A model generated the notes under the pieces. It was not told the DNA's origin and searched no databases. It saw only the letters and a list, made by a program, of their open reading frames with translations. This document shows positions 6,724-40,108 of a DNA stretch of 64,000 bases, in pieces. Location of the stretch: the IMG/VR virus record IMGVR_UViG_3300010885_076238, positions 124,001 through 188,000 of that record. One strand, 5' to 3'. Every line of letters begins with the position of its first letter. The first letter of the stretch is position 1. The translations under genes were made by a program, and so were the position numbers.

Positions 6724-6942
6724 ATGGATAAAGAAGTTGTTGAGATAATGAGTACGGTTTGTCAAAAACTTTCTCATGCTAGAGTAAATTTATCTAAAAT
6801 ACTTGGGCCAGAGGATTACTCTAAATTTAGAGAAATTATTTTTGATTGTGAACAACTTATGGCGGCTTATTGTGATTGTGCGCCAATAAGGTTGATTGAT
6901 GGACAAGTAGAAGATATAATGTTAAATTACGAGACAAAATAA
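6724..6942 (+). CDS. hypothetical protein
   Basis: 72-aa ORF in operon. Confidence 0.6.
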   Translation: MDKEVVEIMSTVCQKLSHARVNLSKILGPEDYSKFREIIFDCEQLMAAYCDCAPIRLIDGQVEDIMLNYETK

Positions 6943-6982
6943 AAATAAATTAGGATCGTTATAGAATAGAACGAGACAACTT

Positions 6983-7055
6983 GCGGCTCTAGCTCAATTG
7001 GCAGAGCAAGGGGCTTTTAACCTCTAGGTTCAGGGTTCGATTCCCTGGGGCCGCA
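6983..7055 (+). tRNA. trnK: tRNA-Lys(UUU)
   Basis: Cloverleaf; AGGGG-CTTTTAA-CCTCT; GGTTCGATTCC. Confidence 0.95.
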
Positions 7056-7089
7056 CTTAATAAAAATTTATCAGACTCGTTATCATATT

Positions 7090-7157
7090 GCCGCAATGCT
7101 TGAAGGCGAACTTAGTTGGTTGAGCATTGAGCCTTCTTATAGTAACCAACCTGCGGC
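7090..7157 (+). ncRNA. candidate multi-pseudoknot small RNA or leader
   Basis: Four complementary segment pairs; starts at the predicted +1 of the promoter. Confidence 0.6.
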
Positions 7158-7178
7158 TTCTAATACAAAGGAATTTTT

Positions 7179-7331
7179 ATGAATGATTGGGAGAAGTATT
7201 ACAAGAAGAGTGGTGCGCCGGACAATCCTCCCCTGCCGGACATTCGTGTTCGTGGGATTCCAGCACGAAATGAACTTGAGAAGTTGCTCAAGAGTCGAGT
7301 GAGGATTGATCCTAAGAAGTTTATAAAATAA
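7179..7331 (+). CDS. 50-aa hypothetical protein (not in ORF track)
   Basis: AAGGA RBS; MNDWEKYYKKSGAPDN...KKFIK. Confidence 0.6.
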   Translation: MNDWEKYYKKSGAPDNPPLPDIRVRGIPARNELEKLLKSRVRIDPKKFIK

Positions 7332-7582
7332 TGTATTATGGATTTTACTCAAAATCTTCTGATGATCGTAATGGTCATGTGGTTTATCTAAATCCAGACG
7401 GCCAGAAAATAAAAGTTTCTTATGCCACCAAAGACCCACTTCTAGATTATTTTAAATTTAAGTGGGAAGATAAGGTTTTTGTTGGGCCTTTGATTAAGTT
7501 GGTTGAAATTAATTGGGCTTATGGTGGGGATTATAATAGTTTGAATATTGGCAAACCACCCAATAAAATAATAATTAAATAA
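7331..7582 (+). CDS. hypothetical protein
   Basis: TAATG coupling to upstream ORF. Confidence 0.6.
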   Translation: MYYGFYSKSSDDRNGHVVYLNPDGQKIKVSYATKDPLLDYFKFKWEDKVFVGPLIKLVEINWAYGGDYNSLNIGKPPNKIIIK

Positions 7583-7589: not shown

Positions 7590-8045
7590 ATGCTAATGGA
7601 GGCAAATATGATAATCAAAGAATGGCGTTTGCATTATTGTTCTGGTAGTAGCGACAAGGTTTATGTTGCTAGGATAGAGAAGCGTTCTGATAAATTCTAT
7701 GGTGTTCCTTGTGAATATGGTCGTAGGGGCGCCGTTCTTAGGCCAGCGGACAAAGGTGTCTATAGAACTCTAGCAGAGGCAGAGAGAGCTTTTTACGATG
7801 TTGTGACTGAAAAGACAGCCAAGGGCTATGCTATAACTGATAGGATTGAAAGCGATGGGGTAAAAGTAGAATCATCAATTAAAGATGAGATAGTTAGGCA
7901 ACTGGAGGCGGTAGGATCAGCTACAGCAGATGATTTGGCTAAGGCATTGGCTTCAGAAGTTGTTTCTTCTACTGAATCTAAGGAATGTGGAGAAGGTGAT
8001 AGAGAAAAGGCTTTGGCTAGGCTCAGGGCAGCGAGTGCGTGGTAA
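7590..8045 (+). CDS. WGR-domain-like protein
   Basis: SDKVY...EYGRRG...EKTAKGY. Confidence 0.8.
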   Translation: MLMEANMIIKEWRLHYCSGSSDKVYVARIEKRSDKFYGVPCEYGRRGAVLRPADKGVYRTLAEAERAFYDVVTEKTAKGYAITDRIESDGVKVESSIKDEIVRQLEAVGSATADDLAKALASEVVSSTESKECGEGDREKALARLRAASAW

Positions 8046-8596: not shown

Positions 8597-8815
8597 AAAA
8601 CTTTGATATAATACCTACTGTTTATTTCTCAGTTTTTTTGGAGATCATCATGAGCAAAACATACACTCCATCAATTAAAATCTGGCAGAATGAGGAAGTG
8701 GTTTTAATTAGTGATGAGCTTAAGATTGAATTAAAAAATATCATTCTTAATATTAAGGGTGATGTAATTCAAATTGAAAATAAAAATAAAATTGAATCGT
8801 TATAGAATTGAACAC

Positions 8816-9086
8816 GGGAGTGTAGACCAACGGCAGAGTCAAAGGACTTATGAAATTGAGTGCCTAAAAGGAAACTTTTAGAGTAGAACTGCTTAAATTC
8901 GGTGAAACCTGTAAAATGGCAATACCGAGCGAAGCCCGAAAGGGAACGTGTAGAGACTTGACAGGCAGCACCTAAAACCGAAAGGTTATGGTGAAGATAA
9001 AGTCCAGACTACAAACCAAAAAGGGTGACGAAAGTCATAGTAGTAAGAAAATCCTTCCAGTGTGGGTTCGAGTCCCACCACTCCTA
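8816..9086 (+). tRNA. trnL: tRNA-Leu(UAA), exons 8816-8849 and 9048-9086, short variable arm
   Basis: Joined exons give AAGGA-CTTAAAA-TCCTT and acceptor GGGAGTG/CACTCCT. Confidence 0.92.
8850..9047 (+). mobile_element. ORF-less group I intron (198 nt, trnL-UAA insertion position)
   Basis: Inserted after U34, ends in G; core elements AAATTCGGTGAAA, AATACCGAGC, GTAGAGACT, AAGATAAAGTCC. Confidence 0.92.
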
Positions 9087-9539
9087 TTTTTTATTTTTTC
9101 CTCTATAATTATCCGTGAGTGCATGACAATTAGGACAAAGAAGTTCAAGATTAGACAAGTTATTATTTGAATTATTTCCATCCTTGTGATGAAGCTCAAG
9201 TGGAATTTTAATTTTCTGCCACTCTGTTCCATCACAGTTCATGCACTTATGTTCAAAAATATTTTCTCTTATTAGTCTGTTCTTTAGCTTAAAGCTTTGA
9301 ATAAATTTTTCATTGTTTAAATATGTTTGAATTGATCTCTTCGGGCCAATTTTATCTCCTTTGCTCCACCCTTGGCCCTTGAAATGAGAAGTATTAATTT
9401 TATACTTTTTAATGTATTTCTTAATAGTTTGATAATTACCACCAGCGGGTTTTATTTTTAATTTATCCAACACCTGCCTTATAGAGGTCGAATCTTGAAT
9501 AATCTTTGATAGCTTGGTAAAATTATACTTCGTACTCAT
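9084..9539 (-). CDS. free-standing HNH endonuclease
   Basis: CMNC...LELHHKDGNNSNN...NLELLCPNCH. Confidence 0.92.
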   Translation of the reverse strand: MSTKYNFTKLSKIIQDSTSIRQVLDKLKIKPAGGNYQTIKKYIKKYKINTSHFKGQGWSKGDKIGPKRSIQTYLNNEKFIQSFKLKNRLIRENIFEHKCMNCDGTEWQKIKIPLELHHKDGNNSNNNLSNLELLCPNCHALTDNYRGKNKK

Positions 9540-24577: not shown

Positions 24578-25183
24578 ATGGCAGCGATTGAGACTGCCAA
24601 GCTCAACTGGGAACATGAAATGTATCTGGTTCTGATGATTAGCAACAACCGCGTCACCTACGCAAAGGCGTTTGACCAGTGGGATTCGGCTGTGCTGTGT
24701 GCTGACAACGTGGTTATGGATATTGCCGGGGTTTCAAACGATATGCTCGATTGGGAGAACGGCGATTACCGCACGGTCTACGAGCATACAAACGGCACTA
24801 CAGTGACGATTGAGACGCTGGACGGGCCGGGAGCTAAGAGTTCGGAAATTCTTGGTTCGTAAGAAATAATTTTCGATCTAGTTCGTTATCCCAATGTGGC
24901 AGCGATTGAGACTGCCGCAGCAACCGGAGCAAAAAAGATGAAGAAAAATGTTTGGTTGAGTTCTGACCCCGCAAACACCGAGGGCGGAGACATGGGCTTC
25001 TGGTGGAATCGTGGTTGCAACAGCATTGCCGCTGTCTCTGTTGATGAAACCGGGCTGCGTTTCGATGGCAGCGACTTCACGGTCGTCATCGACAACCCAG
25101 GCCAGACCAACGAGAGCGTGAAAGTGCTGGTCAACGACGTGGTCGTCTTCGGTTCTGTCAAGACCAAGGCCAAGGCGAGTTGA
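24578..25183 (+). other. two hypothetical CDS (24578 or 24620-24862; 24896 or 24938-25183)
   Basis: Each follows a promoter plus hairpin. Confidence 0.65.
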
Positions 25184-25270
25184 GTCCTACCCTCCCCTGC
25201 CCATCAAGGGCAGGGGAGGGAGCTAGAAAATAATTTTCAATCCAGTTCGTTATACAAGTAGGAGAAAAAA

Positions 25271-25633
25271 ATGAGAATTACTGCTAAAGAAGCTGCTGAT
25301 CGTTTGCGTGTGAGTTATGTAGTTGCTGCGGGCATCATGGCCCACCTAGAAGAGACAGGCGCAGCGAAGGTTGTGGAAAAGAAGTTCCATGCCAGCGGGA
25401 AGGGAAAGCCGACTCGCGTGTATGAAGTTGAACAGCATACTGTGCTGAACTTCGGAGACGTTGCTGCTGCTGCCGCCGCACCCGTAGTCGAGCCAGTTGT
25501 AGTCGAGCCAGTTGTGTTCACGACTCCGGTTGTCGAGGCTCCGGCTGTTGTCGAGGTTGTCGAGGAGAAGATCGAAACGCTCGACCATGTAGCGGCTGCG
25601 TTGGCTCGACTCAAGGCCGACAACGCCGCGTGA
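25271..25633 (+). CDS. small winged-helix-like protein, paralog 2
   Basis: N- and C-termini near-identical to 29296..29652. Confidence 0.8.
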   Translation: MRITAKEAADRLRVSYVVAAGIMAHLEETGAAKVVEKKFHASGKGKPTRVYEVEQHTVLNFGDVAAAAAAPVVEPVVVEPVVFTTPVVEAPAVVEVVEEKIETLDHVAAALARLKADNAA

Positions 25634-25674
25634 AATAAAAATTGATTTATTTCGTTATCTGATTAGGAGAAACA

Positions 25675-26061
25675 ATGACCACTACAAATCGTTCCCCCTA
25701 CACTGCCGCTGTACTTGAAGCCGACAGTCACACCACCCTAATGGGATGGGTTCGTGACAATCACGAAATCCCCGGCGATTTTCTGCTCAAGGGACACCAT
25801 TGCACTGCCGACACTAAGCCCGCCGCAAAAAGCTTGGCAGGCCATATGGTCGGCCAGCGTGTCGAACTGCGTGTTGTTCGATTCGGTCGGCTTGAAGGAA
25901 TTATGGCAGTAGAAGTAGAAACTGTGATGCCATCGAAGAATACTCGAAAGCACGTTACGATTTGCCATGCACCCGATGTCAAGCCCATGATGTCAAACAG
26001 CATAGTCGAATGGGTTGATGTGCAGCCGTTCATCCTGTACGGGGTAGTGCAGGAGGTGTAA
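25675..26061 (+). CDS. 2H phosphoesterase-like protein
   Basis: Two HxT motifs (HHCT, HVT) about 50 aa apart, KPMMSN. Confidence 0.7.
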   Translation: MTTTNRSPYTAAVLEADSHTTLMGWVRDNHEIPGDFLLKGHHCTADTKPAAKSLAGHMVGQRVELRVVRFGRLEGIMAVEVETVMPSKNTRKHVTICHAPDVKPMMSNSIVEWVDVQPFILYGVVQEV

Positions 26062-26148
26062 AGGCGAACACCTAATGTCTATAAAGCGGTTGGCTAGATA
26101 GCATAAAATAAAAATTGATTTATTTCGTTATCTGATTAGGAGAAATTC

Positions 26149-26325
26149 ATGGAAAATTTCGTAGGAAAAACTGTTGCGTCGGTAGAGTACCCATCCAAGT
26201 ACGCCCGAGTAGTTTTGACCTTTACTGATGGCACGAAGTTGCTTATAAAGGAAGTTGGGTACGAAGGTGAACTTGAGGTTCGAGTCGATGGAACTGTTGT
26301 GGAAGGCGAAGAGGATGGAGAGTAA
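26149..26325 (+). CDS. 58-aa hypothetical protein (not in ORF track)
   Basis: Promoter and AGGAG RBS; MENFVGKTVASV. Confidence 0.7.
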   Translation: MENFVGKTVASVEYPSKYARVVLTFTDGTKLLIKEVGYEGELEVRVDGTVVEGEEDGE

Positions 26326-26336
26326 GTAAACACCTA

Positions 26337-26654
26337 ATGTCTATAAAAATGCAGTGGATTAGTTTTTTCGGCCCGCGCCGTCCAATCAACGGACAAAAGA
26401 TTTTCTACTACGGCGAGCATATCGGCGTTTGGAGTGGAACGTACAGCCTAGACTGGAATGATCCGGTTAGCCCCCATAGGATAATTTGTGGGGAAAAGCC
26501 AAGCAAGGAAACCTCCGATGTATTGGCTGAGTACGGCTTGAACAATATCACCATGATTGTAGATCGAATGGATGCTCCTTGGTGGATGCCAGACGAGGGT
26601 CAGCCCAAGCCAGAAAAGCCAGATCAAAATTACCCGCCAGAATATCCAAAATAA
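26337..26654 (+). CDS. hypothetical protein
   Basis: ORF track; start uncertain. Confidence 0.6.
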   Translation: MSIKMQWISFFGPRRPINGQKIFYYGEHIGVWSGTYSLDWNDPVSPHRIICGEKPSKETSDVLAEYGLNNITMIVDRMDAPWWMPDEGQPKPEKPDQNYPPEYPK

Positions 26655-26691
26655 TTTTTAGTTCGGTTCGTTATACAAATAACAATACAAT

Positions 26692-27340
26692 ACGCGGCCT
26701 GCTGAAGTAGGTGGAACGTAACCACCTATACCAGTTCTGTGCGAGGAACTGGCAGGGGTAGTAGGGCAATCGCAAGCCCGAAATGAGAAAAGCCACAGCA
26801 ATTACCACCGTGGCCCGCGTAAAAATAATTTATTACAATGCGTAGGTTAAGCGTTGAGCAGCCAGCGGTTGGCGGGAGTACTACCACAACCGTCCGTTAG
26901 ACCAGCATAGGAAAGTGTGGGTAAAATCCCGCCGCATTGATAATTTTAGTTATGTGATTAGAGAGAACAAGACAGGGGACGCAAGGTTGTTCGCGGCTGT
27001 CGAAGGCCAAGACGGTTCGCTAAATAGACCTACGTTGAAGCAACATAGATCGCGTTCTGTGGCCGGTGCGACTCCGGGCGTCTCCTGTCCTGTTCTCTTG
27101 AAAAATAATTTTCCTTTCTGTTCGTTATGTGATTGTGGTGGGTTGCAAGGCCGGATGAACGGCTCCCCAATGGCTGTCATGAAAGCCGGGAAGTTGAATA
27201 GGTGGTCAAGTCGATGGTTTCAAACCAAAGGCGAATCCACTCACCCACATTTTTTCTTCTAATTTCTATATACAGCAGAGAGAACTCGCCAAGAGGCCCA
27301 ACGGCCACACTGGGAGAATTGGAGTAAGGAGCCTCTGCTG
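26692..27340 (+). ncRNA. cluster of five candidate structured RNAs (26692-26820, 26836-26939, 26962-27098, 27134-27249, 27273-27340)
   Basis: GC-rich blocks, each closed by a terminal helix, separated by AT-rich spacers or promoters. Confidence 0.65.
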
Positions 27341-27358
27341 GGTTTCAAAGGAGTAAAT

Positions 27359-29217
27359 ATGTCAAAGCAAGAAATGATCGAAATTGTGGATTCTCAGGTC
27401 AAGTACGGACTGCCCAGAGAGGAAGCAATCCGCCTACTAGCTTTCTTTATGGACGAAGATGATCCAGAGAACAACGCAGAGATTTGGTTTCAGCAAAAAA
27501 TCGGCGGCGGTTGAAAATAATTTCTGCCCTAATTCGTTATAAAATCAAGGAGATCATCAATGACACTTGCAGAAGCCCGCAAGATGGCCCAAGAAGATGC
27601 TGACGATTATCAAGTCGTCGTCAATCTGATCTATGACAAACTCGCTGAGTACCCTGTGACTGACGATGGCGAGGACAACCGATACGGATTCTGTGCAGTA
27701 GGTGCTATGGACATTATGTTTCCAGAATACCTCAAGGATTACTGGAACGTAGTGGGCGTGGTAAGCCCCAAGGGAGGAATATGAAAATGTTAGGAAGTTG
27801 CCATTGCGGATCAGGCCAGCCTAGTTGGTGGGAAAACGATGCCAGAGGAATCCCTCTTGCAAGAATTTGCGAAAAGTGCAAAGAGGAAAAGCTGTCTAAG
27901 TACCGACCAGAAGTTCTGTCTAACTCAAACTACGAGGCAGACGAACCTATAGAGCCAGAAGATTACTAAACGGAGAGAATAATTATGCAGGCGGACATAG
28001 CCACCTTGACCGTCAAGGCGAGGCAAAAGGCTCGCAAATGGGTCAAGGAAAGGCTGAAAATGCACCCCGGCAAGTTCGTGGTCAAACAAGGTGAGCAGTC
28101 TTGTCCTTGCTGGAACGGGGAAAACGCTATTCAGTTAGAGAACACGACCGACAGATGGAGCGGTTGGTTCCCCGTAACAGACATAGAAATCTCTAGCGAC
28201 AATGAAAAATAATTTTCACTTTTACTCGTTATCTATATATGGAACATTTAGGACATCAAAAATGGTGGTGCGACGTTTGCGACTCCAGGCAAGTGGATAG
28301 CAAAGATTCCACAACTGGTTCGTACTATCAAGTAGCTGGCATGGAACATCCAGCCAGATCAAAAGAAGAAAAATGGACATCCATTATTTTCGCTGTCTGC
28401 TGCGAGTGTGAACCAATCAAGGCTTTGCACAAAATCAAAGTCGAAAACCAAGTCGTTCGTAAAAATTAGCTAATATACAAAATATTAATTAGCCAATAAT
28501 TATTATTTTCAACACCTGATGTTTATATGGAAACTAGACGGGGGCAATAAAATAATTTTCATTTCAAATCGTTATGTTCTTAGGAGGACAATGAAATGAA
28601 AATTTGCACCACCGATTCTATCTTGGAAAGCATCACTCAAAACAAGTTTGATGATGAATCCAATTCTCGTTCTGGCCGCATGAGTGGCGAAATGATGCGA
28701 ATTGCCGACGAAGTCGAGCAAGAGCTAGAGGACGAGTTCATGGACGAGTGTGACGAGAGCAACAGGGAAGCGGCGTAAAGCCAGCATTTCCAAGGGTTTG
28801 CTGCTTGTCTCTTTTTTTTGGAAGCGCCGACCGACATTGGTCGTAGTTATCTCACAGGAGGAACCTATGTATCGAAATTATGAAGAATACGAATCTGCTT
28901 TCGACAAGTTGCTAGATAACGCTCCTGCAAACGTCAAAATCAAAAAAAAGACGAGACAGGAGTTCGATTACGAAAATTATCGTGACAAGATCGAATGGTA
29001 TTTGATGGAGGAATGGGGCACTGAGCCTTTCCACGAAATTTTCTTCGGCCATATCAGTGAGATCGAATCGGACGAGCCTACTCCCGAAGATTTTCGTGCA
29101 GAGGAATTGCATGGCTGCGTCTATGACATCATCGACAGTTGCTACGAGAAGAAATTCAGCGTGAATCAGGCAGCGTCGAAAATTTATTTGTATTTGAAAA
29201 AAGAGAAGGCCATCTAA
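27359..29217 (+). other. seven small CDS (27359-27514, 27560-27784, 27781-27969, 27985-28212, 28239-28469, 28596-28778, 28867-29217)
   Basis: RBS or leaderless starts after promoters; two carry Cys pairs. Confidence 0.65.
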
Positions 29218-29295
29218 TCAGGGCAAAATTTTTTTCGGTTCGGATCGTTATACCAATACAGGCCATGTGGCCTACTAACAAGGAGAAAAAGAAAA

Positions 29296-29652
29296 ATGCG
29301 TTTGACTGCGAAAGAAGCCGCCGAAAGGCTGAGTGTGAGTTATGTGATTGCCGCCGGTATTATGTCTTATCTTGAGGACACTGGTAAGGCCAAGGTTGTA
29401 GAGAAGAAGTTTCATGCAAGTGGGAAGGGTAAGCCAACCCGTGTCTATGAAGTAGATCAACTTACAGTGATTGACTTTGGTGATGCCGTTGCAAAGCCAG
29501 AAGTCGTGACGGTGACGGAGACAGTTGCAGTGACGGAGACGGTTGCGGTGACGGAGACGCTTCCAGCCGTGGCAGAGATTGCAGAGGATCGCGTCGAAAC
29601 GCTGGATCATGTCGCTGCGGCTCTGGCTAGGCTGAAGTCTGAGGCTGCGTAA
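29296..29652 (+). CDS. small winged-helix-like protein, paralog 3
   Basis: GKGKPTRVYEV; VTETVA tandem linker. Confidence 0.8.
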   Translation: MRLTAKEAAERLSVSYVIAAGIMSYLEDTGKAKVVEKKFHASGKGKPTRVYEVDQLTVIDFGDAVAKPEVVTVTETVAVTETVAVTETLPAVAEIAEDRVETLDHVAAALARLKSEAA

Positions 29653-29833
29653 TACGCGCCCATAGGAATCCATCCCCCTCTGCTTCTCAATCGCGGAGGG
29701 GGGTGGATAAACCTAAATTTGTGCTACTATAATAATACAACAATCGGCCGTCCGGCCGTGCCGCCACAAGCGCCACGGGTTGATTCCCCACGGGAGCCAG
29801 CCATCAAAGACCGGCCCGCCGATTATTGCACAA

Positions 29834-29917
29834 GCCGAAGTGGCGGAATTGGCAGACGCGCCAGACTCAAAATCTGGTGTCCAAAAAGACGTGTGGGTTC
29901 AATTCCCACCTTCGGCA
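29834..29917 (+). tRNA. trnL: tRNA-Leu(CAA)
   Basis: CCAGA-CTCAAAA-TCTGG; long variable arm. Confidence 0.95.
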
Positions 29918-30002
29918 GTAACACCTACCGTTTATTATTAATTAATAATAAACCTATAAAATAATTAGTTCGCTCAATCGTTATTTGGTATGGAGGAAGG
30001 AT

Positions 30003-32451
30003 ATGTTTAGCAGGGAAGATTTACTTACAATTTTAGCGTGTTTGGAATGTAAAGAATACAACACGCAAGGCAAGATAGATTCAAGAGTTCCAGTAGAGGA
30101 CGGCAAGAACGTCATCGACATCGTTGATATGTTGAACAGGATCGAAAAAATCAAAACTGTTATCAGGGATCAATTGTAAATTCCTAAAATAATTAGTTCG
30201 CTCAATCGTTATTTGGTATAGGGAAGATTTACTAAAAGAGAGAGTCTTATGATTTTCAAACTGTTCAATGGAGCAAAAACTACAGAGGCTTGGAATCCTA
30301 ATAGCCCTGAGTTTATTGACGATTGGAAACCGGAAGAACACATCATCAAGTGTCAGGCGGTTCAAGTTACTTACTGCAATCATATCAAAGTTCATGTTGA
30401 CGATGATATGATCGAGTTTCACTGGGACGAAGATGGCTTTATTGAACACGATGGCGTGTTTTATGGCGATTTCATCGTAGAAGGATAAATTACAAATGTC
30501 TAACAACTATGTCACAATGAACATAAGAATGTATGCCTCCAAGCCAGATAAGGTTATGGAGCAAGTCATTCTAAATCTTGGATGGGAATGGTACTCAGCA
30601 AGCAAGGCTTGTGAATACGCCAGAAAAGTTATAAAGGGCAGATGGATCAAAGGCGAAAGAAAGATCAAGAAAAATCCATACTCCGCCTACTTTTATGCTC
30701 GCCATGTTATCGGAGGAAGATGGCCCGAAGCAGAAAATTTTATCTTGAAGGATGAACACGCCTCTTACTTGTACGCTAAGTATGTTCTCAAAGGCAGGTT
30801 TGAGAAAGCAGAGAAAAAGAGAGGGCTTTTCAAGTCGCCTAGAGAAATATACTTCTACTCCAAATACGTTATGAAGTCTAGGTGGAAAGAAAAAGAAAAG
30901 TCTATGGTAGACTTTGTTGTAAAAAATACCTGGGGCTTTGAGAAGGTTTTCGACTACTGTATTCAGATCAGAAAAGAAAGATGGCCCCAAATTGAAGGCG
31001 AAATTGTAAAGTCCAGCAAAGAATACATCGGTCGTTATTTCAAATTATTGAAAGAAAAGGACAAGGAAGAATTTTATAATAAAGTTCTCGCCCAGTCTCT
31101 CGTAGAACCAAGAAGTTCTTGGCAACGAAACGAAGCCAGAGAATTTATCAAAACTATGAAAAACTAGTTTGAACATACTATTATAAAGTATGTATTCTGA
31201 AAAACATTGCATCATTACAATAAATGGCGACGAGTGTACCGTAGAGGGAAAATGCCTACTGACCGATAAACGTCAATTTGTAAAAGTAGCAAAGGAAGAT
31301 TATGAAAAATGGGTCAGGGGAGAAGGAGCTATAAAAACTCTTATGCCCTATCTAACCGAAAGCGAAATGAACTTTCTTGAACACGGCGTTACAGATGAAG
31401 GTTGGGGAAAAGTAGTAAGTCCAAAAATTTCAATCCCAAAAGCAGAGTAGCCCGCACAAATTTAGACGGCAATATCTTATAAATATTCTGCCTCGCATTC
31501 GTTACGACTAAAAACATATAAAATAATAATTGTCATAAAAATAAAAATCACCTGATGTTTATATGGTCAGCAGAAGGATAAAAATAATTTTCGATCCAGT
31601 GCGTTATGGAAATATAAGTTCCACAACCGGAGAAAAGGTATGACAAAGAGAGAGCAGCAGACGGTAAAAAGGATGCTGGAAACGGGCCGCGTGATTGATT
31701 TCCGTGACGAACGCCGACCGGGGGAAGTCGCGGAGGATGGCAACGGCTTGTGGGCATACCTCAAACCTGGCCTGAGATGCAGTCTGTCCGACACCCACAT
31801 TTGCCACGAATATACGGTGGCTGACCTAGCTCGTGCCGTCAAGTGGGCTGAACCGTGCAATTGCAACGAGTGCAATATAAAATAATTTTCGATCCAGTGC
31901 GTTATCCCAGCAGAGGAGACAATTATGCCAAACTGGTTTGAAGATCCCGCCGTTTTGGATAAGTGGACGATCATTGAAGTTCAGTTGGATGAAGCCGACT
32001 GTCAAGAATACAACGAGTACCTTGACTGGCTTGAGGCAACAACCGGCGAACAAGAGATGCCAGAAGATTTTTCTTACTAGTAAAAAATAATTTTCGATCC
32101 ATTTCGTTATAGAAAACAGGAGAAAAAATAATGATTACTGCAAAAAATGCGTTAGAAGCACTTTGTCGTGATGGACTCGCTACAAGTTGGACGAGGAAAA
32201 CTGAGGGTAGCGGAAGGCTTCGCTACACAGATTACACTGTGAAAAGCGATGCCTTTTCCCTCTCAAACGAAACCTATGGACAAAGAAGTTTTTTATACTT
32301 TCGATGCAAAAGCCCAGAACTTACTTATCAAATAATCAAAGTTCTTCGTGAAAATGGAGGCAACCCAGGAACTAGTTGGAATGGTGGGCCTGAACAGGGA
32401 CACATCGAAATGCAAGTCAGTAGGTTCAAAGGTTGGCATTGGTGGGAGTAA
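30003..32451 (+). other. small hypothetical CDS (30003-30179, 30249-30488, 31190-31450, 31640-31885, 32131-32451)
   Basis: Each behind a promoter or RBS. Confidence 0.6.
30496..31167 (+). CDS. helical-repeat phage protein (AYxYAxxVIxGRWPEAE)
   Basis: Five repeats of about 23 aa. Confidence 0.75.
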   Translation: MSNNYVTMNIRMYASKPDKVMEQVILNLGWEWYSASKACEYARKVIKGRWIKGERKIKKNPYSAYFYARHVIGGRWPEAENFILKDEHASYLYAKYVLKGRFEKAEKKRGLFKSPREIYFYSKYVMKSRWKEKEKSMVDFVVKNTWGFEKVFDYCIQIRKERWPQIEGEIVKSSKEYIGRYFKLLKEKDKEEFYNKVLAQSLVEPRSSWQRNEAREFIKTMKN

Positions 32452-32716
32452 GAAGCACAAAAATAAAAATAAAGTCTAGCCCAACCTGCCCAATACATAT
32501 TCATACAGAATGGCAGGTTGGGCTTAGGTGCTTAAACACCTAGTGTTTATTATAAGAATAAATAAAAAATTGGGGTTGGGCGCATTTCTATCGCTCTTAT
32601 CGCTGTGACAATTTGATAACGATTCTTTTCAAAAATAATTTTCCCAAAAATTATTTTCCCTTTCGACCGTTGTGCAGTATGGCCGCGATTGAGACGGCCA
32701 AGCCAAATCGGGAAAC

Positions 32717-33298
32717 ATGAAAATGGATACGATGACTTCGGATCAGTTGGTTGACCGTCTGCTTGATCTGCGTGGTGCGAAGTGCGGCTTTCGCATGGTC
32801 GCTGAAACCCCGACCCGTCTGAATAAGACGATTCGTGATGCGGCGGGCAATCGCGTTCCGAACCCCGCCTACGGCACTACAAAGTTGTCGGAAGTGGAAG
32901 TGACGCTGAACCCGATCCATCAGAACAACGTAAACGCTCAGAAAAAGCGTGAGGGACACGATCCCGATTACGTTGCTGGGCCTTGCCAGTGGGGCAAGCG
33001 TCTGTTTCGGGAGGATGGTACGGTCGTGCCGATTCGGATTCACGACGGCAAGCCGCATAGCATGGTCGTGAAGTTTGAGAGAACGATCCAACGCGAGTTC
33101 CTCCGCGACGGCAAGCCGGTTGATGCGGCATCGGCCGCAGAGATTGCAAAGCAGTTGGCAGAGAAGAATGAAAAGGCCAACGACGCTGCGGAAGAAAAGC
33201 AGGGCGTGGAAAAGCCGGTGATCCACTTGACCTACAGTTTCGAGAACATTCGTCAAGTCACGCTCGACGGCGTGGTTTACGAAATCACTAAGGGTTGA
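32717..33298 (+). CDS. hypothetical phage protein
   Basis: Promoter, hairpin and terminator; GC-rich codons. Confidence 0.8.
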   Translation: MKMDTMTSDQLVDRLLDLRGAKCGFRMVAETPTRLNKTIRDAAGNRVPNPAYGTTKLSEVEVTLNPIHQNNVNAQKKREGHDPDYVAGPCQWGKRLFREDGTVVPIRIHDGKPHSMVVKFERTIQREFLRDGKPVDAASAAEIAKQLAEKNEKANDAAEEKQGVEKPVIHLTYSFENIRQVTLDGVVYEITKG

Positions 33299-33412
33299 CC
33301 GATCCGGCCCCTCCCCCTACTGGGGGAGGGGTTAGGGGATAAAGAATAATTTCCGATCCGGTTCGTTATCTAGTATGGCCGCGATTGAGACGGCCAAAAA
33401 AGGAGAGCGATC

Positions 33413-33649
33413 ATGACCTACCTTCACGACATTCACCCCGCCGCGACGATCATCGAAAGCCCGTTCACCGGCCACAACGGCAGCGGAGTCGATGGATACG
33501 GCGGGAAAATCAAAACCGGATTCAAGGTCAGAATCAACAATCGACTCCATAGGCTCTACTGTATGTGCTGGTCGAACTCTGGCACACTTTGGGTCAACGT
33601 GGGCGGGAAGCAGATCATCGTTCACGAGCATCGGCATCCAAGGGAATAA
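33413..33649 (+). CDS. hypothetical phage protein
   Basis: GYGGKIKT...RLYCMCWSNSGT motif. Confidence 0.75.
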   Translation: MTYLHDIHPAATIIESPFTGHNGSGVDGYGGKIKTGFKVRINNRLHRLYCMCWSNSGTLWVNVGGKQIIVHEHRHPRE

Positions 33650-33856
33650 AATCCCATTCATCAAACACCTGATGTTTATATAGCGGCGGACGAGCCGCGC
33701 CGAGCCTGGGCTGGGCGCATTTCTATCGCTCTTGTCCCTCTGACATTTTGATAACGAATTAGATGGAAAAAAATTTTGGCCAAAATTATTTTGGCTTTCG
33801 ACCGTTATGCAGTATGGCCGCGATTGAGACGGCCAGCCTTAGTGGGAGATTGAATC

Positions 33857-34798
33857 ATGGCTCATAAAGTCGAAAACATGTTCTACGTTGGCGAGACGCC
33901 TTGGCATGGTCTGGGCGTTGCTTTGGAAGAGGCTCCGATCATTTCCGACGCCATTACGGCGGCGGGTCTGGATTGGACTGTCGGACTCCGCGACCTTTTC
34001 ACGGCAGACGGCGTAAAGGTGCCGAATCGTGCGACGGTTCGCGAGACGGACGGAAGTGTGCTGGGCGTTGTCGGCCCGCGTTACACTCCGCTCCAAAATG
34101 CGGCGGCTCTCGACTGGTTTCAGCCGTTCATCGACAGCGGAGAGGCTTCGCTTCACACTGCCGGTAGCCTTGACGAGGGTCGCAAGGTCTGGGTGCTTGC
34201 CCAGTTGAACCGCGACCCCAGTGTGATCGTTCCGGGCGACGACGTTCGCAAGTTCATTCTCTTGTCGAATTCGCACGACGGCACGACGGCGGTTCGTCCG
34301 GGTTTCACGCCGATTCGCGTTGTCTGTGCGAATACGCTCGCGGCGGCTCATTGCTCGACCGCCAGCAAGTTGATTCGCGTTCGTCACACTCGCAAGATTG
34401 CGACGAATTTGGAAAAGGTTCGCGAGTTGATGAACGCCGCGAACGCGGAATTCGAGGCGACTGCCGACCAGTATCGGCATCTTGCCAGCAAGGCGTTCAA
34501 CCAGACCGACGTTCGCAAGTACGTCAAGGTGCTGCTCGACGTTGAGACGGTTTCGGATGCCGACCTGCCCACTCGCACCAAGAATACCATCGAGGAAATT
34601 CTTGGACTGATCGAGGGGCCGAAGCAATCGATGCCGGGCGTTCAAGGCACTTGGTGGGCCGCGTACAACGGGTTCAACGAATACTTGAACTACAATCGCG
34701 GTCGCACGACCGACAACCGTATGAACAGCCTATGGTTCGGCATGGGTGCGACCGACAACCGCAAGGCTCTCGACCTTGCCCTTAGCTTGTCGGCCTAG
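33857..34798 (+). CDS. DUF932/DUF945 (TIGR03299-like) phage/plasmid protein
   Basis: PWHGLG, AGLDW, LQN, AGSL, NSHDG, TPIRVVCANT, RHT, GTWWAAYN. Confidence 0.92.
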   Translation: MAHKVENMFYVGETPWHGLGVALEEAPIISDAITAAGLDWTVGLRDLFTADGVKVPNRATVRETDGSVLGVVGPRYTPLQNAAALDWFQPFIDSGEASLHTAGSLDEGRKVWVLAQLNRDPSVIVPGDDVRKFILLSNSHDGTTAVRPGFTPIRVVCANTLAAAHCSTASKLIRVRHTRKIATNLEKVRELMNAANAEFEATADQYRHLASKAFNQTDVRKYVKVLLDVETVSDADLPTRTKNTIEEILGLIEGPKQSMPGVQGTWWAAYNGFNEYLNYNRGRTTDNRMNSLWFGMGATDNRKALDLALSLSA

Positions 34799-34918
34799 TG
34801 CGAACGATGCCCCCTACCCGAAAGGGTAGGGGGGATTCATCGTAAAATTATTTTCGGTTTGATTCGTTATCTAGTATGGCCGCGATTGAGACGGCCAAGC
34901 CAATCGGGAGACCTAATC

Positions 34919-35107
34919 ATGATCATCGCCGCCATCCTCGCCGCCGCGTACGTCGCTTTCGGCATCGCCGGGACATCGTACGTCAACCGTTGGATTCGCA
35001 ACGCTGACGACGGGGATGCAGGCTGCGGCCTGTCGAGCCTGCACATTCTCAACCCCATCATGGTGGTGGTTGGAGCGAGAATGATGCTCGACAAGCTGTC
35101 CTCCTAG
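34919..35107 (+). CDS. small membrane protein, copy 1
   Basis: Duplicate of 41326..41520. Confidence 0.75.
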   Translation: MIIAAILAAAYVAFGIAGTSYVNRWIRNADDGDAGCGLSSLHILNPIMVVVGARMMLDKLSS

Positions 35108-35237
35108 CGGGGGGCAGCCGCCCAACTCAACACCTAATGTTTATTGGCAAAGGTGAGCAATAAAAAATAAATTCCCAGCTAATTCGTTATCTAGTATGGC
35201 CGCGACAGTGACGGCCAAGCCAATCTAGGAAATAACG

Positions 35238-35579
35238 ATGGCTCGCAAGCGTAGGTCAGACCGTAATCACGCGGTCTATCAGATTGTTTGCAAACCAACT
35301 GGAGAGCGTTACATCGGACTGACGGTAGTGCGTGGAAGAGCCGTTCAGAAGAGCGTGAAGATTCGTTGGGACGGCCATGTTCATCACGCCGTAGTAGAGA
35401 GAGACAACCCGCTTCAACGTAGAATTCGTGAGTTTGGCCCCGAAGCATTTTCTCACGAACTGCTTCAAGTTGTGAGAGGCAAGCAGCCCGCTCATGACAT
35501 TGAAAGGGGCTTGATCGTCAATATGAAGCCCGAACTGAATGTGGAGTGTACCGGCAAGAAACAAGCAAATCGTTCCTAA
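35238..35579 (+). CDS. GIY-YIG nuclease family protein
   Basis: AVYQI...RYIGLT...RW...H...E...LN. Confidence 0.8.
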   Translation: MARKRRSDRNHAVYQIVCKPTGERYIGLTVVRGRAVQKSVKIRWDGHVHHAVVERDNPLQRRIREFGPEAFSHELLQVVRGKQPAHDIERGLIVNMKPELNVECTGKKQANRS

Positions 35580-35635
35580 TTTTTTCGACTCTCATTCGTT
35601 ATACAAATGTAGCCACCACCCCAAGCAGGAAAAAA

Positions 35636-36389
35636 ATGACTATCACAGAAGTCATCACGCCCGGCCCAGGCGGATTCAAATTTCTCAACATGACGAACGA
35701 GAAGTTCGACTCGTTCACCGCAGACGAAATCATTGCCGCTGCGGAAGCGGCCGGTCTGTGGACATACTACGAACTGGACGACGACGGGAAGCTGACCGGC
35801 TTGGCGATCACCACGAAAGAAAGAGAGCCAAACGGATAGCGGGCTTTGGCCCAATGCTCTAACACCTAATGTTTATAATCAACAGTGAGTTGCTTGCCAA
35901 AACCAAAGGAGCCGGACATGGAAACTTTTGAGCAGTGGTGCAAGAGGATGCAAGAAGAACACGATCAATGGATTTCAAGTCCCGAAGGACAAATCTGGAT
36001 CAAGGGCTAAAAATTATTTTCGGTTTGATTCGTTATCAAGTATGGCCGATCATTCAACACCTAAGGAACAAGTCATGAAAGCCAAAGAAGTGCAGATTGG
36101 ACAGGAGTTCTACACCAACTACGCGAGCATGGAACACTGCAAGCCGCTGTCTAACGTTCATCGTTGGAAAATGATCGCTCCAGAGCATCGGTTGGCGCAG
36201 CTTGTGCTTGTCACCGGGGACGTTTGCGATCACACTCGCATCATCGATGAAAAGGAAGAAGTGTTCGCCACAGCCGGTGAAGCTTGGCAAGATTGTGCGA
36301 CTCAACTCAACGCGATCATCGAAAAGATTCGTGAAGCCGTCAAGGATTGCGAGTCCAAAGTTCCCCGCCAGTGCAAGGAATCCGCGTGA
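35636..36389 (+). other. two hypothetical CDS (35636-35839, 36075-36389)
   Basis: Promoter and RBS; starts shortened relative to the ORF track. Confidence 0.65.
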
Positions 36390-36448
36390 AAAAGGGGGCT
36401 TGGGAAACCAAGTCCCCAATAATTAACACCAAATGTCTATTATAGAGT

Positions 36449-36733
36449 ATGAGACTATTTATTGATGACATCAGAACTCCATCCGAAGACTACATCGTTC
36501 TCCGGTCTTCTGAGGATGCCATTCAATTCATAAAGCAAAATGGCTGGCCTGAGTTCATCAGTTTTGACCACGATCTTGGCGGCGACGATACCACTATGGT
36601 CTTTCTCAAAAGGCTTGTAAACGAAGTATGGGACGGCAAAACCATGCCGCCAGACTATATCGTTCATAGTGCCAACCCAATTGGATCGAAGAACATCGTG
36701 AGTTTCATGGAAAGCTGGAAGAAGTCAATCTAA
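36449..36733 (+). CDS. cyclic-phosphate-processing receiver-like domain protein
   Basis: LFIDDIR, ISFDHDLG, VHSANPIG. Confidence 0.8.
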   Translation: MRLFIDDIRTPSEDYIVLRSSEDAIQFIKQNGWPEFISFDHDLGGDDTTMVFLKRLVNEVWDGKTMPPDYIVHSANPIGSKNIVSFMESWKKSI

Positions 36734-36807
36734 AAAATTTTTTTTACTTTCATTCGTTATACCAATATGGCAGCAATTGAGACTGCCGGATTACTAGGAT
36801 TGCTCTA

Positions 36808-37037
36808 ATGTTTGGACTCGTTTCTATGATTTTGTTTAGCGTCGGAACTATTGGATTTTTCTACGTCACTAAGGAGGGCAACTAATGTTTATCGTAATTG
36901 AGCAGAAGGAAGACGGCACGACTCAGATTCTTTCGCCCGTAATCAACGACCAGAAAGAAGCAGAAGTAGAGGCTGCTTGGATTTCCCACCTGAACGGTTG
37001 GAGTTGCACAGTAAAGCAAGTGGATCAAGCCGCTTGA
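36808..37037 (+). other. two coupled mini-CDS (36808-36885, 25 aa hydrophobic; 36885-37037, 50 aa ending QAA)
   Basis: TAATG overlaps, AAGGAGG RBS. Confidence 0.6.
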
Positions 37038-37169
37038 AACAATCGGCAGTAAACCTGCCACCCAACCCAAAAGGTTGGGCCATTAGCAAATACCTAATGT
37101 TTATTGTTGAATCGAACCTGATAAAAATAATTTTCGATCTAGTTCGTTATAGATTTAGGAGGACGTTTT

Positions 37170-38589
37170 ATGACTAAGCCCGTTGAAATCTCAACCAAGG
37201 AAATGTGGGAACTCTCAGCAGTGGGAGCCTGCATTCTTCTAGCTGTTCAAGAGATGGAAGAAGATGCTGTCGGCAGGCAAAAGGTGATCGAAGCGGGAAA
37301 CCGTTTGTTCGATCTCATGGGCAAAATTGGAGAACGAGATGATTGGTCATCCAGAAGCCCAAAAGGAGAGGAAAAAGTATGAAAAAAACTGTCGGAGCAA
37401 CCAAGGCTCACGCATCATGCGGATATTGCAAACACTTGCGCAAGTTCGGAAAGCGACTTGCCAATAAGGCTTCTCGCAAACACGGAAATAATTTTCGATT
37501 CAATGCGTTATCAAATATAGAGAATCCCAACCCCGGAGAATAATCATGTTCAAGAAGAAAACCGATGGTCGATTCCGTGTCGAGCTGAAGTATAAGAACG
37601 GCAGCGAAGCATTCATGGTCAGCAACGACTACCAGCAAATCTGCCGCCTGTACGAGCTTGCCAGAACTCCCATTTGCGAAAATTTCACACAGTCGATCTA
37701 CGAAGTGATCTTGTTCGACGGCGATAAGCCCCTTGCAAACTGGACTAACTCAGCCGCATTAGTCAAAGTGGCTTGACAATCCTAGGCGATTCTGGGTAGG
37801 GCCGGTCTCATGAGCCGGATTGGGTAGCACCCCCCGCGTGGTTCGATTCCACGACTCGCCATTTAGAATGCGGTAAAATGCAACAAGGAGCAAACCATGA
37901 ATACTGAATTTTATGTGGGCGAACACCGTGGTATCTGGGTAGGCCCAGTCATCCGAAATAAACAGACGAATCATCCTGTGGCATTCGTCGCAGCCGGATC
38001 AGAACACTTTTCCGAAATATTATCCCTAGCACCAGAAATGCTTGAAGCACTACGGAAAATCAGGAATAACTCAGACAACGCGGAAGTCAACAAAATCGCA
38101 TCAGAAATCCTACTCAAGGCAACCAAACACGCCTAATCGTCAACACCTAATGTTTATTTCCCGAACGGGACAATTCAGACAAAAATCAGGCAATTTATAA
38201 TAATTATTCCCGCTCGGGAAAGTTAGGTAATCTGTGCAAGCCCATAAAAGAAAATAAAAAATCCAAGGCCCGATTGACGATAGATAAGGTACGGGACAGA
38301 AAACCATTCAAAGGAGTGAATCATGTTGGCTTGGATCGGAATCGCAATAACCGCCGTTGGAATGATTTTTAGTAGCTATGAGTTCGTGAAAAAAAATCCA
38401 GAACTCTTGCCCAAAGTTCAAAACGTACAACTGCTGGCCCATCGTCAACGTCAATCAGCGTTCATGTACAGTCAAGTAAATTTGGCCTATGATGTTGTGA
38501 ACGGAAAACATTGGTTTCAACACCCAGACGGTCAGTGGAGAGAATTCCCACCAAAACCCTCTCAAGTCGATATGCAAAACAGCCGATAA
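37170..38589 (+). other. small CDS (37170-37382, 37379-37543, 37546-37776, 37897-38136, 38323-38589)
   Basis: RBS-supported ORFs. Confidence 0.6.
37785..37861 (+). tRNA. D-arm-less tRNA-like gene, CAU anticodon
   Basis: CCGGT-CTCATGA-GCCGG; CGTGG-TTCGATT-CCACG; GGCGATT/ACTCGCC. Confidence 0.65.
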
Positions 38590-39213
38590 ATAAAATAAGG
38601 AAAGGAATCCAAAATGAAAAAAATCAACTGGAACCAAATCGTCAACGCTCTTATTCTTGTCAAAATAGGACAAGACTTAGGAACCAACTCGCAACTTACC
38701 CAATCCATCCATCATATCATCGACGTTATTGCTACGTTCGCTAATGCCTTTGTAAGAATATAAAATAATTTCTCGATCAGTTCGTTATACAATAGTGGCC
38801 GTCCCATTCTCAGGAGAGCAAACATGAACACTGACACCAACTGGACTTACGAGCGCGAGGGAGCCAAAGAGATGATCGCAAGGCTCGAAGAAGAAATTCA
38901 GAATTCGACCTCCAAGCAGGATCGAATCAACAAACAGGAAGAAATACAAAGACTCCAATCGTAAAGAGTCAAAAAATAATTTTCAATCCCGTTCGTTATA
39001 CAATAGTGGTCAACTAAAGGTGCTGACTGAAAGTGACACACGGCGGACAAGGTGGCCGACCGCAGGATCAGCACCACTCTAAAGGATCAAAAATGTATCT
39101 GACTCTCAATGATTGGATGATGCTCGTTGGACTGATTTCTTTCGCAGGATTCTGTTCCTACACTGCCCACGAAATTCAAGGTGCAATCCACAACTACTTA
39201 CATGGAGAATATA

Positions 39214-39963: not shown

Positions 39964-40108
39964 AAATAGGGGGCTTGGGAAACCAAGCTTCCCCCAACTA
40001 TCAACACCTAATGTTTATAATGCCAACCCGCCGGAAACTTCTCGAAGAAAAATAATTTTCCATTCAAATCGTTATAAATCATCGGCCCAAAACCCTGAGG
40101 ATCAAATC

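What the first reader, a model, noticed from the sequence alone, without database searches (positions are those of the whole stretch)
7090..7157. 68-nt RNA with three mutually crossing helices starting at the predicted promoter +1
Seen: closing stem GCCGCA/TGCGGC encloses A=ATGCTT (7096), B=GAAGGC (7102), C=GTTGGTT (7115), then A'=GAGCAT (7122), B'=GCCTTC (7131), C'=AACCAAC (7144), in the order A B C A' B' C'. G7090 lies 6 nt after CGTTAT, the same offset as the leaderless ATGs. It sits 21 nt before a 50-aa ORF. The topology matches no ribozyme or riboswitch I recognise. Inference: a compact knot-like, nuclease-resistant or switching RNA.
Basis: partly seen in the sequence, partly recalled or inferred. 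Interest (0 to 1): 0.72.

Follow-up and report, generated by a model that had tools for sequence, protein, structure and literature searches.

The report
Conserved 68-nt phage leader RNA
A 68-base non-coding stretch that starts at the predicted start site of a phage promoter is kept almost letter for letter in related freshwater phages, so it is probably a functional RNA element, but one of its three "crossing helices" is not conserved and its job is still unknown.

Summary
The sequence facts are right. The window is part of a 204-kb uncultured freshwater phage.

I found the element in six gene contexts in metagenomic relatives. In each it starts 6 nt after a phage -10 box, and 61 of 68 positions never change. 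Promoters, SD linkers and neighbouring proteins (as low as 32-48% identity) diverge. The conserved block ends at the two ends of the closing stem.

It is not coding: the ATG at 7096 is ACG or TTG in most copies, and one copy is frameshifted. It matches no Rfam family.

The "three mutually crossing helices" do not hold. Helix A is broken without compensation in most copies. The closing stem, helix C and helix B suffer no disruptive change. B competes with an equally conserved local hairpin (7097-7100/7105-7108). No pair shows a two-sided change, so no helix is proven.

The middle of the element is homologous to the 3' coding end of a neighbouring 198-aa gene family.

Best reading: a portable promoter, structured 5' leader and SD cassette, like the 11 simpler promoter-hairpin-SD cassettes in this genome. 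A stand-alone small RNA remains a serious rival.

The parts
7057..7067 (+). A/T-rich upstream promoter box (TTAATAAAAAT), a variant of the genome-wide AAAATAA box
   Evidence: Motif contexts across the genome. A comparable box lies upstream of every element copy.
7077..7083 (+). -10-like promoter element TCGTTAT
   Evidence: 52 copies against 8.9 expected, with strong strand bias. Other copies of the element have ACGTTAT, TGGTTAT, CAGTTAC or TCGTATA at the same distance.
7090..7157 (+). Conserved 68-nt non-coding element, with predicted +1 at G7090
   Evidence: 61 of 68 positions are invariant in 5 distinct sequences from 6 contexts. The flanks diverge immediately outside it. There is no Rfam hit.
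7090..7095 (+). P1 closing stem, 5' strand, pairing with 7152-7157
   Evidence: Invariant in all assembled copies. A G7090A variant is seen in one metagenome contig.
7152..7157 (+). P1 closing stem, 3' strand
   Evidence: Invariant. Conservation ends here in L005 and L031.
7097..7108 (+). H1 local hairpin (YGCU, UGAA loop, GGCG). It is mutually exclusive with helix B.
   Evidence: Pair 7097-7108 is U-G in 3 sequences and C-G in 2. It is part of the MFE and RNAalifold structures.
7102..7107 (+). Helix B 5' strand (GAAGGC), pairing with 7131-7136 in the loop of helix C. With C this would form an H-type pseudoknot.
   Evidence: 6 bp, perfect. The only change is C7136T in L031, which keeps a G-U pair.
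7131..7136 (+). Helix B 3' strand (GCCTTC)
   Evidence: See the B 5' strand.
7115..7122 (+). Helix C 5' strand, pairing with 7143-7150
   Evidence: 100% paired. C7146T keeps a G-U pair. In L005 an inserted G before 7115 pairs with the equivalent of C7151, and an inserted C restores the 1-nt spacer.
7143..7150 (+). Helix C 3' strand
7094..7129 (+). Helix A (7094-7100 with 7123-7129). It is present in this phage only and is not conserved.
   Evidence: 7 WC bp here. There are two mismatches in the L002/L028 type and one each in L005 and the L029/L030 type. It is the only helix with broken cells, 4 of 30.
7096..7182 (+). 28-codon ORF overlapping the next start codon (ATGA). Not a gene.
   Evidence: The ATG is ACG in L002-4, L028-30 and two metagenome contigs, and TTG in L005. 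L005 also has a frameshift and a TGA after 11 codons.
7158..7178 (+). Linker carrying the Shine-Dalgarno AAGGA (7169-7173)
   Evidence: Sequence. The linker is 21-27 nt in all contexts but only about 52% identical in L005.
7179..7331 (+). 50-aa ORF (p50), the first gene of the unit in this phage
   Evidence: Homologs. No family match.
6983..7056 (+). tRNA-Lys(UUU) with its own promoter (6956-6962), directly upstream
   Evidence: It is adjacent to the element in 3 of 6 contexts.
7590..8045 (+). WGR-domain protein gene. It lies downstream of the element in every context long enough to show it.
   Evidence: Pfam WGR, E = 7.8e-5. tblastn map of the loci.

Best explanation
The 68 nt are the first transcribed bases of a phage transcription unit. 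They form a conserved, non-coding, stem-closed RNA domain. Its 5' end (G7090, the predicted +1) is paired from the first base in a 6-bp closing stem. Inside sit a 7-8-bp hairpin (C) and a 5' segment. That segment folds either locally (H1) or onto the loop of C (B, giving one H-type pseudoknot).

With its promoter and a 21-27-nt SD linker, the element makes a portable promoter-leader-SD cassette. The cassette sits in front of different small genes (p50, a 198-aa gene, a WGR-domain gene) in different phages.

The most likely action is in cis. A fully paired, compact 5' end shields the transcript from decay that begins at the 5' end. Because its loops are as invariant as its stems, it probably also serves as the binding site of a specific protein that sets expression of the unit.

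Shown: the conservation, its boundaries, the non-coding status, the promoter spacing and the modular shuffling. Inferred: the transcription start, the fold and the function.

The element appears to have arisen from a duplicated 3' end of the 198-aa gene.
For: 1. The element lies 6 nt after a -10 box in six contexts, with four different downstream and four different upstream neighbours.
2. It is an island of conservation. Against L005, the element differs by 5 substitutions and 2 one-base insertions. The promoter/spacer is 46% identical, the SD linker 52% and the tRNA-Lys 69%. Against L031, the element has 1 change while the WGR protein is 32% identical. Against L030, it has 2 changes while p50 is 43% identical.
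3. It is not coding on either strand.
4. Every change in the closing stem, B, C or H1 keeps the pair; only helix A has broken pairs.
5. The same genome holds at least 11 cassettes of promoter, 5'-terminal hairpin and SD. They have the same layout, and the hairpin stem covaries (GGCCG/CGGCC against GGCAG/CTGCC).
6. Transcripts with leaders of 20 nt or more are more structured in their first 30 nt than short-leader ones (median -4.0 against -0.8 kcal/mol; Mann-Whitney p = 5e-4).
7. The complementary B', C' and closing segments are absent from the homologous 3' ends of the 198-aa genes. So the complementarity seen in the element is missing from its gene-derived homologs.
8. Established knowledge: 5'-terminal stem-loops stabilise bacterial and phage mRNAs (for example the ompA leader).
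Against: - There are no RNA data. The one metatranscriptome contig that holds the element (X21) also carries 25 unrelated bases upstream of 7076, so it does not show the start site and may be DNA or read-through.
- No pair shows a two-sided change, so no helix is proven.
- The thermodynamic stability is ordinary (z = -1.2).
- A simple stabiliser would not need 61 of 68 invariant positions.
- Part of the near-identity may reflect recent recombination in a mosaic phage population rather than selection. In L028-L030 the linker and the first roughly 20 nt of p50 are also near-identical.
- Close relatives lack the element (L001, L027, L040, L041), or keep only a degenerate piece (L006-L011). It is therefore dispensable.
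Confidence: 0.45

Rival explanations
1. A stand-alone small stable RNA gene. The 68-nt RNA is made from its own promoter, cut off at the base of the closing stem, and acts in trans, for example as a decoy or partner of a host or phage protein. It would be organised like the phage's tRNA genes, which also have private promoters and no terminators.
For: Conservation stops exactly at both ends of the closing stem in L005 and L031. The downstream gene differs between contexts. Loops are as invariant as stems. The tRNA-Lys and tRNA-Ile units have the same promoter-then-RNA layout, and the element lies next to tRNA-Lys in three contexts. From established knowledge, phage T4 encodes small stable RNAs of unknown function in its tRNA cluster.
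Against: There is no terminator or known processing signal after the stem. An SD and ORF always follow within 21-27 nt, as expected of a leader. No RNA evidence exists. No Rfam or tRNA-model similarity was found.
Confidence: 0.3
2. One reading: all three helices A, B and C form at once inside the closing stem, giving a knot-like, nuclease-resistant RNA, or A acts as the alternative arm of a switch.
For: All the complementary segments exist in this phage. A overlaps the closing stem, B and C, so in this one sequence it could compete with them.
Against: A is broken without compensation in most copies: A.C and C.A in the L002/L028 type, U.C in L005, C.A in the L029/L030 type. Sites 7097 and 7127 occur in all four combinations. 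Forming A and B together is sterically strained, because a 3-nt linker would have to span about 12 stacked bp (my inference).
Confidence: 0.04
3. A neutral relic or recombination scar. The element would be a left-over 3' end of a 198-aa gene that travels with a promoter cassette, and is near-identical only because it spread recently by recombination.
For: Positions 7105-7137 are homologous to the 3' coding end of the 198-aa family. Local alignment scores beat 300 of 300 shuffles for L030 and L027. The 3' flank TTCTAA matches that gene's last codon plus stop. Microhomology GCTTCTAA marks a deletion junction in L002. The population is mosaic.
Against: The flanks that share its history (promoter, SD linker) diverge far more than the element. 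The element copies resemble each other far more than the parent gene ends do. Its self-complementary segments are absent from the gene copies.
Confidence: 0.09
4. A DNA-level site, such as an operator or recombination site built of interleaved inverted repeats, rather than an RNA.
For: The B and C half-sites are each 29 bp apart centre to centre. The element lies at module junctions.
Against: Conservation starts at the predicted +1, not in the promoter. G-C to G-T changes at 7136 and 7146 and the U-G/C-G change at 7097 preserve RNA pairs but not DNA palindromes.
Confidence: 0.05
5. A mimic of a host RNA, for example a solitary CRISPR-repeat-like RNA anti-CRISPR. Positions 7115-7150 are 36 nt, starting GTTGG and ending CCAAC.
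For: Only the length and end motifs, which resemble some 36-nt repeats as I recall them from memory. Phage RNA anti-CRISPRs exist (PMC10651486). Near-invariance would fit mimicry.
Against: Two exact-pattern scans of 185,579 species' genomes with invariant 22-24-nt cores found nothing. GCCTTC pairs with a segment outside the 36-mer. No array or cas context is known.
Confidence: 0.03
6. A 28-aa leader peptide gene (7096-7182), translationally coupled to p50 by the ATGA overlap.
For: The ORF and the ATGA overlap exist in this phage.
Against: The start codon is ACG in most copies. L005 has TTG, a frameshift and an early stop. The variable sites are not enriched at third codon positions.
Confidence: 0.02

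Closest known systems
PeSL cassettes (promoter-early stem-loops) of T4-type phages (PMC2839356, PMC4122927)
   Same: Small promoter-plus-structure cassettes flank small orphan genes. They recur at module junctions and go with insertion, deletion and swapping of genes between related phages. Short homologies mark the junctions.
   Different: In PeSLs the stem-loop is a terminator upstream of a sigma-70-like promoter. Here the structure is downstream, starts at +1, is 68 nt and complex, and the promoter is not sigma-70-like (G at the second position of the -10 hexamer). This phage showed no T4 Gp23 match, although that search also failed in all 14 control genomes and so says little.
5'-terminal stem-loop mRNA stabilisers (E. 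coli ompA leader, phage leaders; from established knowledge)
   Same: The structure begins at the very first transcribed base and leaves no single-stranded 5' tail. It sits ahead of an SD and ORF. The simpler hairpin cassettes in this genome have the same layout.
   Different: Known stabilisers tolerate sequence change so long as the stem holds. Here loops and linkers are invariant, and the domain is much larger than needed.
Small stable RNAs in the phage T4 tRNA cluster (species 1 and 2; from memory)
   Same: Phage-encoded, non-coding, next to tRNA genes, closed by a terminal stem, and of unknown function.
   Different: There is no sequence or model similarity. Those RNAs are about 120-140 nt and are processed from a tRNA precursor. 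Here the RNA has a private promoter and an ORF follows at once.
Pseudoknotted regulatory leaders (for example the phage T4 gene 32 leader pseudoknot; riboswitch aptamers closed by a P1 stem; from established knowledge)
   Same: A compact domain in a 5' leader with a possible H-type pseudoknot, conserved unpaired bases and a closing P1 stem just upstream of the SD.
   Different: No family match in Rfam. No ligand or protein is known. The downstream genes vary. The pseudoknot (B) is unproven and competes with H1.

Membership tests
Any Rfam 15 family (ribozymes, riboswitches, tRNA-like, xrRNA and others) | A covariance-model match at or near the gathering score | tested here: not met
   The whole window at gathering score gave only tRNAs, a tmRNA and a group I intron. 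Positions 6900-7350 at E <= 10 gave only hits on the neighbouring tRNA-Lys.
tRNA or tRNA-like gene | A cloverleaf with a T arm next to the acceptor 3' strand, detected by ARAGORN or the tRNA model | tested here: not met
   ARAGORN and RF00005 are silent on 7090-7157 on both strands. There is no T-loop motif. The closing stem's resemblance to the ends of tRNA-Lys is not kept in L005 or L028.
PeSL cassette | A stem-loop acting as a terminator upstream of a sigma-70-like early promoter | tested here: not met
   The structure lies downstream of the promoter. No terminator-like site was found. The -10 box is CGTTAT.
PeSL cassette | Sits at junctions of shuffled small genes between related phages | tested here: met
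   Six contexts with different neighbours, and a microhomology junction in L002.
5'-terminal stem-loop stabiliser | A helix starting within 0-2 nt of the transcript's 5' end | tested here: inconclusive
   Met only if the start site inferred from the promoter spacing and the leaderless genes is right. No 5' end data exist.
5'-terminal stem-loop stabiliser | Lengthens the half-life of the downstream mRNA | not testable with these tools
   Needs decay assays.
H-type pseudoknot | Two helices in the order S1 S2 S1' S2', both supported by covariation or probing | tested here: inconclusive
   B and C have that order, with 7-, 9- and 7-nt loops. Both are 100% paired, but with one-sided changes only. 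B competes with hairpin H1, which is equally supported.
   4 of 30 cells are unpaired and there is no compensation.
Protein-coding small ORF | Start codon and reading frame kept in homologs | tested here: not met
   ACG or TTG in place of ATG, and a frameshift with a stop in L005.
RNA anti-CRISPR (solitary repeat unit) | Close similarity to a CRISPR repeat of a host | tested here: inconclusive
   Exact scans with invariant cores found nothing in 185,579 species' genomes. Inexact similarity could not be searched.
Type III antitoxin RNA (ToxI-like) | Tandem repeats of a short unit upstream of an endoribonuclease toxin gene | tested here: not met
   The element is single-copy and not tandemly repeated. 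The 198-aa protein, whose N-terminal domain weakly resembles the RelE/YafQ/HigB fold, follows the element only in L002-4 and is absent from this phage.

The most novel reading that the evidence does not exclude
The element is a trans-acting, compact pseudoknotted phage RNA. It would be kept nearly invariant because it binds a specific host or phage protein, for example as a decoy against an RNA-targeting defence or a nuclease. It would also have been born de novo from the duplicated 3' end of a gene whose N-terminal domain weakly resembles the RelE fold. That would be a documented case of a coding remnant turned into a structured RNA.
Probability: 0.15. Interest if true: 0.7.

Novelty: new member of a known kind. 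Interest (0 to 1): 0.35.

Why it matters
If real, this adds an undescribed RNA motif to the small set of conserved structured leaders or small RNAs known from uncultured freshwater phages. It also shows a portable promoter-leader-SD cassette that moves between gene contexts, extending the PeSL idea beyond T4-type phages. Finally, it offers a traceable origin of a structured RNA from the 3' end of a protein gene. It does not open a long-standing question, and its function is unknown.

Tried and rejected
1. Rfam at gathering and at permissive thresholds found nothing on the element.
2. The tRNA-like reading failed on both strands. The match between the closing stem and the ends of tRNA-Lys is not conserved.
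3. The 28-aa ORF is rejected by the homologs.
4. There are no paralogous copies in the 204-kb genome.
5. IMG/VR scans by DNA pattern and by three flanking proteins or alignments gave no further copies. One IMG/VR relative (L001) lacks the element, both at the syntenic site and anywhere in its 118-kb contig.
6. The metagenome pattern scan returned only identical copies and three chance hits in GC-rich genes.
7. Two exact scans of the species genomes were empty.
8. The INPHARED phage collection has no close relative.
9. Sequencing runs: only one RNA run holds a short part of the element, and it gives no 5' end information.
10. Complex prediction of the RNA with p50 and the WGR protein was not folded by the tool. 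It is no evidence either way.
11. Covariation tests were uninformative because the copies are too similar.
12. Pfam and PHROGs give no function for p50, p83 or the 198-aa protein.
13. The most divergent p50 allele looked up (L041) has no element.

Full report
**What the window is.** The window is bases 124,001-188,000 of a single 204,311-bp virus record with 34.7% G+C. It carries many tRNAs, a tmRNA and a group I intron. No cultured phage is close to it. The DNA is found in freshwater metagenomes.

**The observation.**
- In this phage, helix A is really 7 Watson-Crick pairs (7094-7100 with 7123-7129), and it overlaps the closing stem.
- The promoter is real as a sequence class. TCGTTAT occurs 52 times in the window against 8.9 expected, almost all on one strand.
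- The motif sits about 14 nt after an AAAATAA box.
- About ten long ORFs begin with ATG at the 7th base after the motif. G7090 occupies that same position.
- The ORF gap is 21 nt.
- Four perfect stems of 6 bp or more are rare in shuffles (0.02%). But 1.5% of all 68-nt windows of this AT-rich genome do as well.
- The nested MFE is unremarkable, with z = -1.2.
- On this sequence alone, the case for a special structure is weak.

**Homologs.** Lookups through the 50-aa protein, the 198-aa protein found next to it in relatives, and an nhmmer profile recovered the element in six gene contexts:

| Locus | Gene order around the element |
|---|---|
| This phage | tRNA-Lys, element, p50, p83, WGR |
| L002-4 | tRNA-Lys, element, p198, p50, WGR |
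| L005 | a different tRNA-Lys allele, element, p50, WGR |
| L028/L029 | p198, element, a distant p50 allele |
| L030 | element, distant p50 allele, p198, WGR |
| L031 | p198, a 154-aa gene, element, WGR |

- In every case the first G lies 6 nt after a -10-like box (TCGTTAT, ACGTTAT, TGGTTAT, CAGTTAC or TCGTATA).
- Two further variants appear in metagenome contigs. One comes from an RNA library, but with unrelated sequence on both sides.
- Close relatives L001, L027, L040 and L041 lack the element.
- L006-L011 keep only a short degenerate piece directly after the promoter.

**Conservation.** Among five distinct sequences, 61 of 68 positions never change.
- Against L005, the element has 5 substitutions and 2 one-base insertions. 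The promoter/spacer is 46% identical, the SD linker 52% and the tRNA-Lys 69%. The p50 ORF has 19 differences in 153 nt, 10 of them at third codon positions.
- Against L031, there is one change while the WGR protein is 32% identical.
- Against L030, there are two changes while p50 is 43% identical.
- The flanks are recognisably homologous but far more diverged. The conserved block ends at the two ends of the closing stem.
- I read this as selection on the 68-nt unit. Some of the identity in L028-L030 probably reflects recent recombination, because the linker and the first roughly 20 nt of p50 are also shared there.

**Not coding.** A 28-codon ORF (7096-7182) overlaps the p50 start as ATGA in this phage. 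Its ATG is ACG in most copies and TTG in L005. L005 also carries a frameshift and a stop after 11 codons. The minus-strand ORF is likewise interrupted, and the variable sites are not concentrated at third codon positions.

**Structure.**
- The variable sites are 7096, 7097, 7127, 7136, 7137, 7138 and 7146, plus two insertions in L005.
- Sites 7096, 7097 and 7127 all fall in helix A and break it. Sites 7097 and 7127 occur in all four combinations.
- C7136T keeps G7102 paired as G-U (helix B). C7146T keeps G7119 paired as G-U (helix C).
- In L005, an extra G before 7115 pairs with the base corresponding to C7151, and an extra C restores the 1-nt spacer before the closing stem.
- T7097C turns a U-G pair into a C-G pair in a local hairpin, H1 (7097-7100/7105-7108, UGAA loop). 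H1 uses the same bases as helix B.
- So the closing stem, C, B and H1 are all fully compatible with the data. B and H1 exclude each other.
- No pair has a two-sided change, so nothing is statistically proven.
- Forming A and B together would require a 3-nt linker to span about 12 stacked pairs (my inference).
- The defensible model is the closing stem plus C, plus either H1 or a single H-type pseudoknot through B.

**Origin.**
- Positions 7105-7137 are homologous to the 3' coding end of the p198 family (the ..SSWLSIEEL.. region). Scores for L030 and L027 exceed all 300 shuffles.
- The TTCTAA after the closing stem matches that gene's last codon and stop.
- The gene copies lack the B', C' and closing complements.
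- The 22-nt repeat around p198 in L002 is explained by a deletion or insertion junction at the microhomology GCTTCTAA.
- The N-terminal roughly 90 residues of p198 weakly resemble RelE/YafQ/HigB-type toxins (Foldseek probability up to 0.85, E 0.1-1). This is a lead, not a finding.

**Genome context.**
- The same genome holds at least 11 cassettes of promoter, 19-nt hairpin starting at about +2, conserved linker with SD, and ATG. The hairpin stem covaries.
- Leaders of 20 nt or more are more structured at their 5' end than short ones (p = 5e-4).
- The element has the same three-part layout, with a structure ending 21-27 nt before the start codon. It is larger and unrelated in sequence.

**Comparison with known systems.**
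- PeSL cassettes of T4-type phages share the modular-shuffling behaviour. They place a terminator stem-loop upstream of a sigma-70-like promoter (PMC2839356, PMC4122927), so this element is not a PeSL.
- Functionally, it most resembles 5'-terminal stabiliser leaders. The invariance of its loops points to a specific partner.
- A CRISPR-repeat-mimic idea, based on the 36-nt GTTGG...CCAAC core and on memory, found no support in two exact genome scans.
- The attempted RNA-protein complex prediction was not run by the tool.

**Verdict.** This is a real, conserved, non-coding element that begins at a predicted transcription start and is new to the databases. The triple-crossing knot is not supported. 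The most likely role is a portable structured 5' leader, with a stand-alone small RNA as a close second. Interest is moderate.

Noticed in passing
window 24580-41306 (hairpins start at 24580, 24898, 32681, 33377, 33816, 34878, 35198, 36769, 39712, 40839, 41288): Eleven copies of a cassette made of a promoter, a 19-nt 5'-terminal hairpin, a conserved linker with SD, and ATG. The stem covaries (GGCCG/CGGCC in 7 copies, GGCAG/CTGCC in 4) and the loop CGAUUGAGA is conserved. The apparent leaderless ATG formed at the hairpin start is mostly not the real start codon.
   Followed up: partly
window 60220-60355 (-): An Rfam tRNA hit spans 136 nt, and ARAGORN does not call it. It reads as a tRNA-Asn(GUU)-like gene with an insertion of about 63 nt in the anticodon loop.
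   Followed up: partly
window 8797-9539: A group I intron (8840-9015, +) starts about 40 nt after a phage promoter (8797-8803). An HNH-type ORF lies on the opposite strand (9084-9539). The host gene of the intron was not identified.
   Followed up: no
window 60862-61213 (-): A phage-encoded tmRNA with tag peptide GTNSYAMAA lies beside a cluster of nine tRNA genes (59421-63063).
   Followed up: no
whole window, e.g. 2043, 3395, 19289, 28226: A non-sigma-70 promoter class, AAAATAA-N14-TCGTTAT. About ten genes have ATG exactly at the 7th base after the motif, so they are probably leaderless mRNAs. Relatives use variant -10 boxes (GAATGTTA in L001).
   Followed up: partly
L002 2389-2985 and homologs P0004-P0018: A 198-aa protein family next to the element has invariant H10, R14 and R18 (motif HAxERFxERF). 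The predicted N-terminal fold weakly resembles RelE/YafQ/HigB/BrnT ribonuclease toxins, followed by a helical C-terminal half. It is absent from this phage.
   Followed up: partly
L033 10736-11794, L034 2789-3847: In more distant relatives the WGR domain is fused to an ATP-dependent ligase (precomputed Pfam hits: WGR, mRNA_cap_enzyme, DNA_ligase_A_M). Here it is a stand-alone 151-aa protein (7590-8045).
   Followed up: no
L006-L011, about 50 nt upstream of the 56-aa p50 homolog: The leader starts with GTTGGTTGAGCC right after the promoter. It looks like a deletion derivative of the element that has lost the closing stem, B, one TTGAGC repeat and C'.
   Followed up: partly
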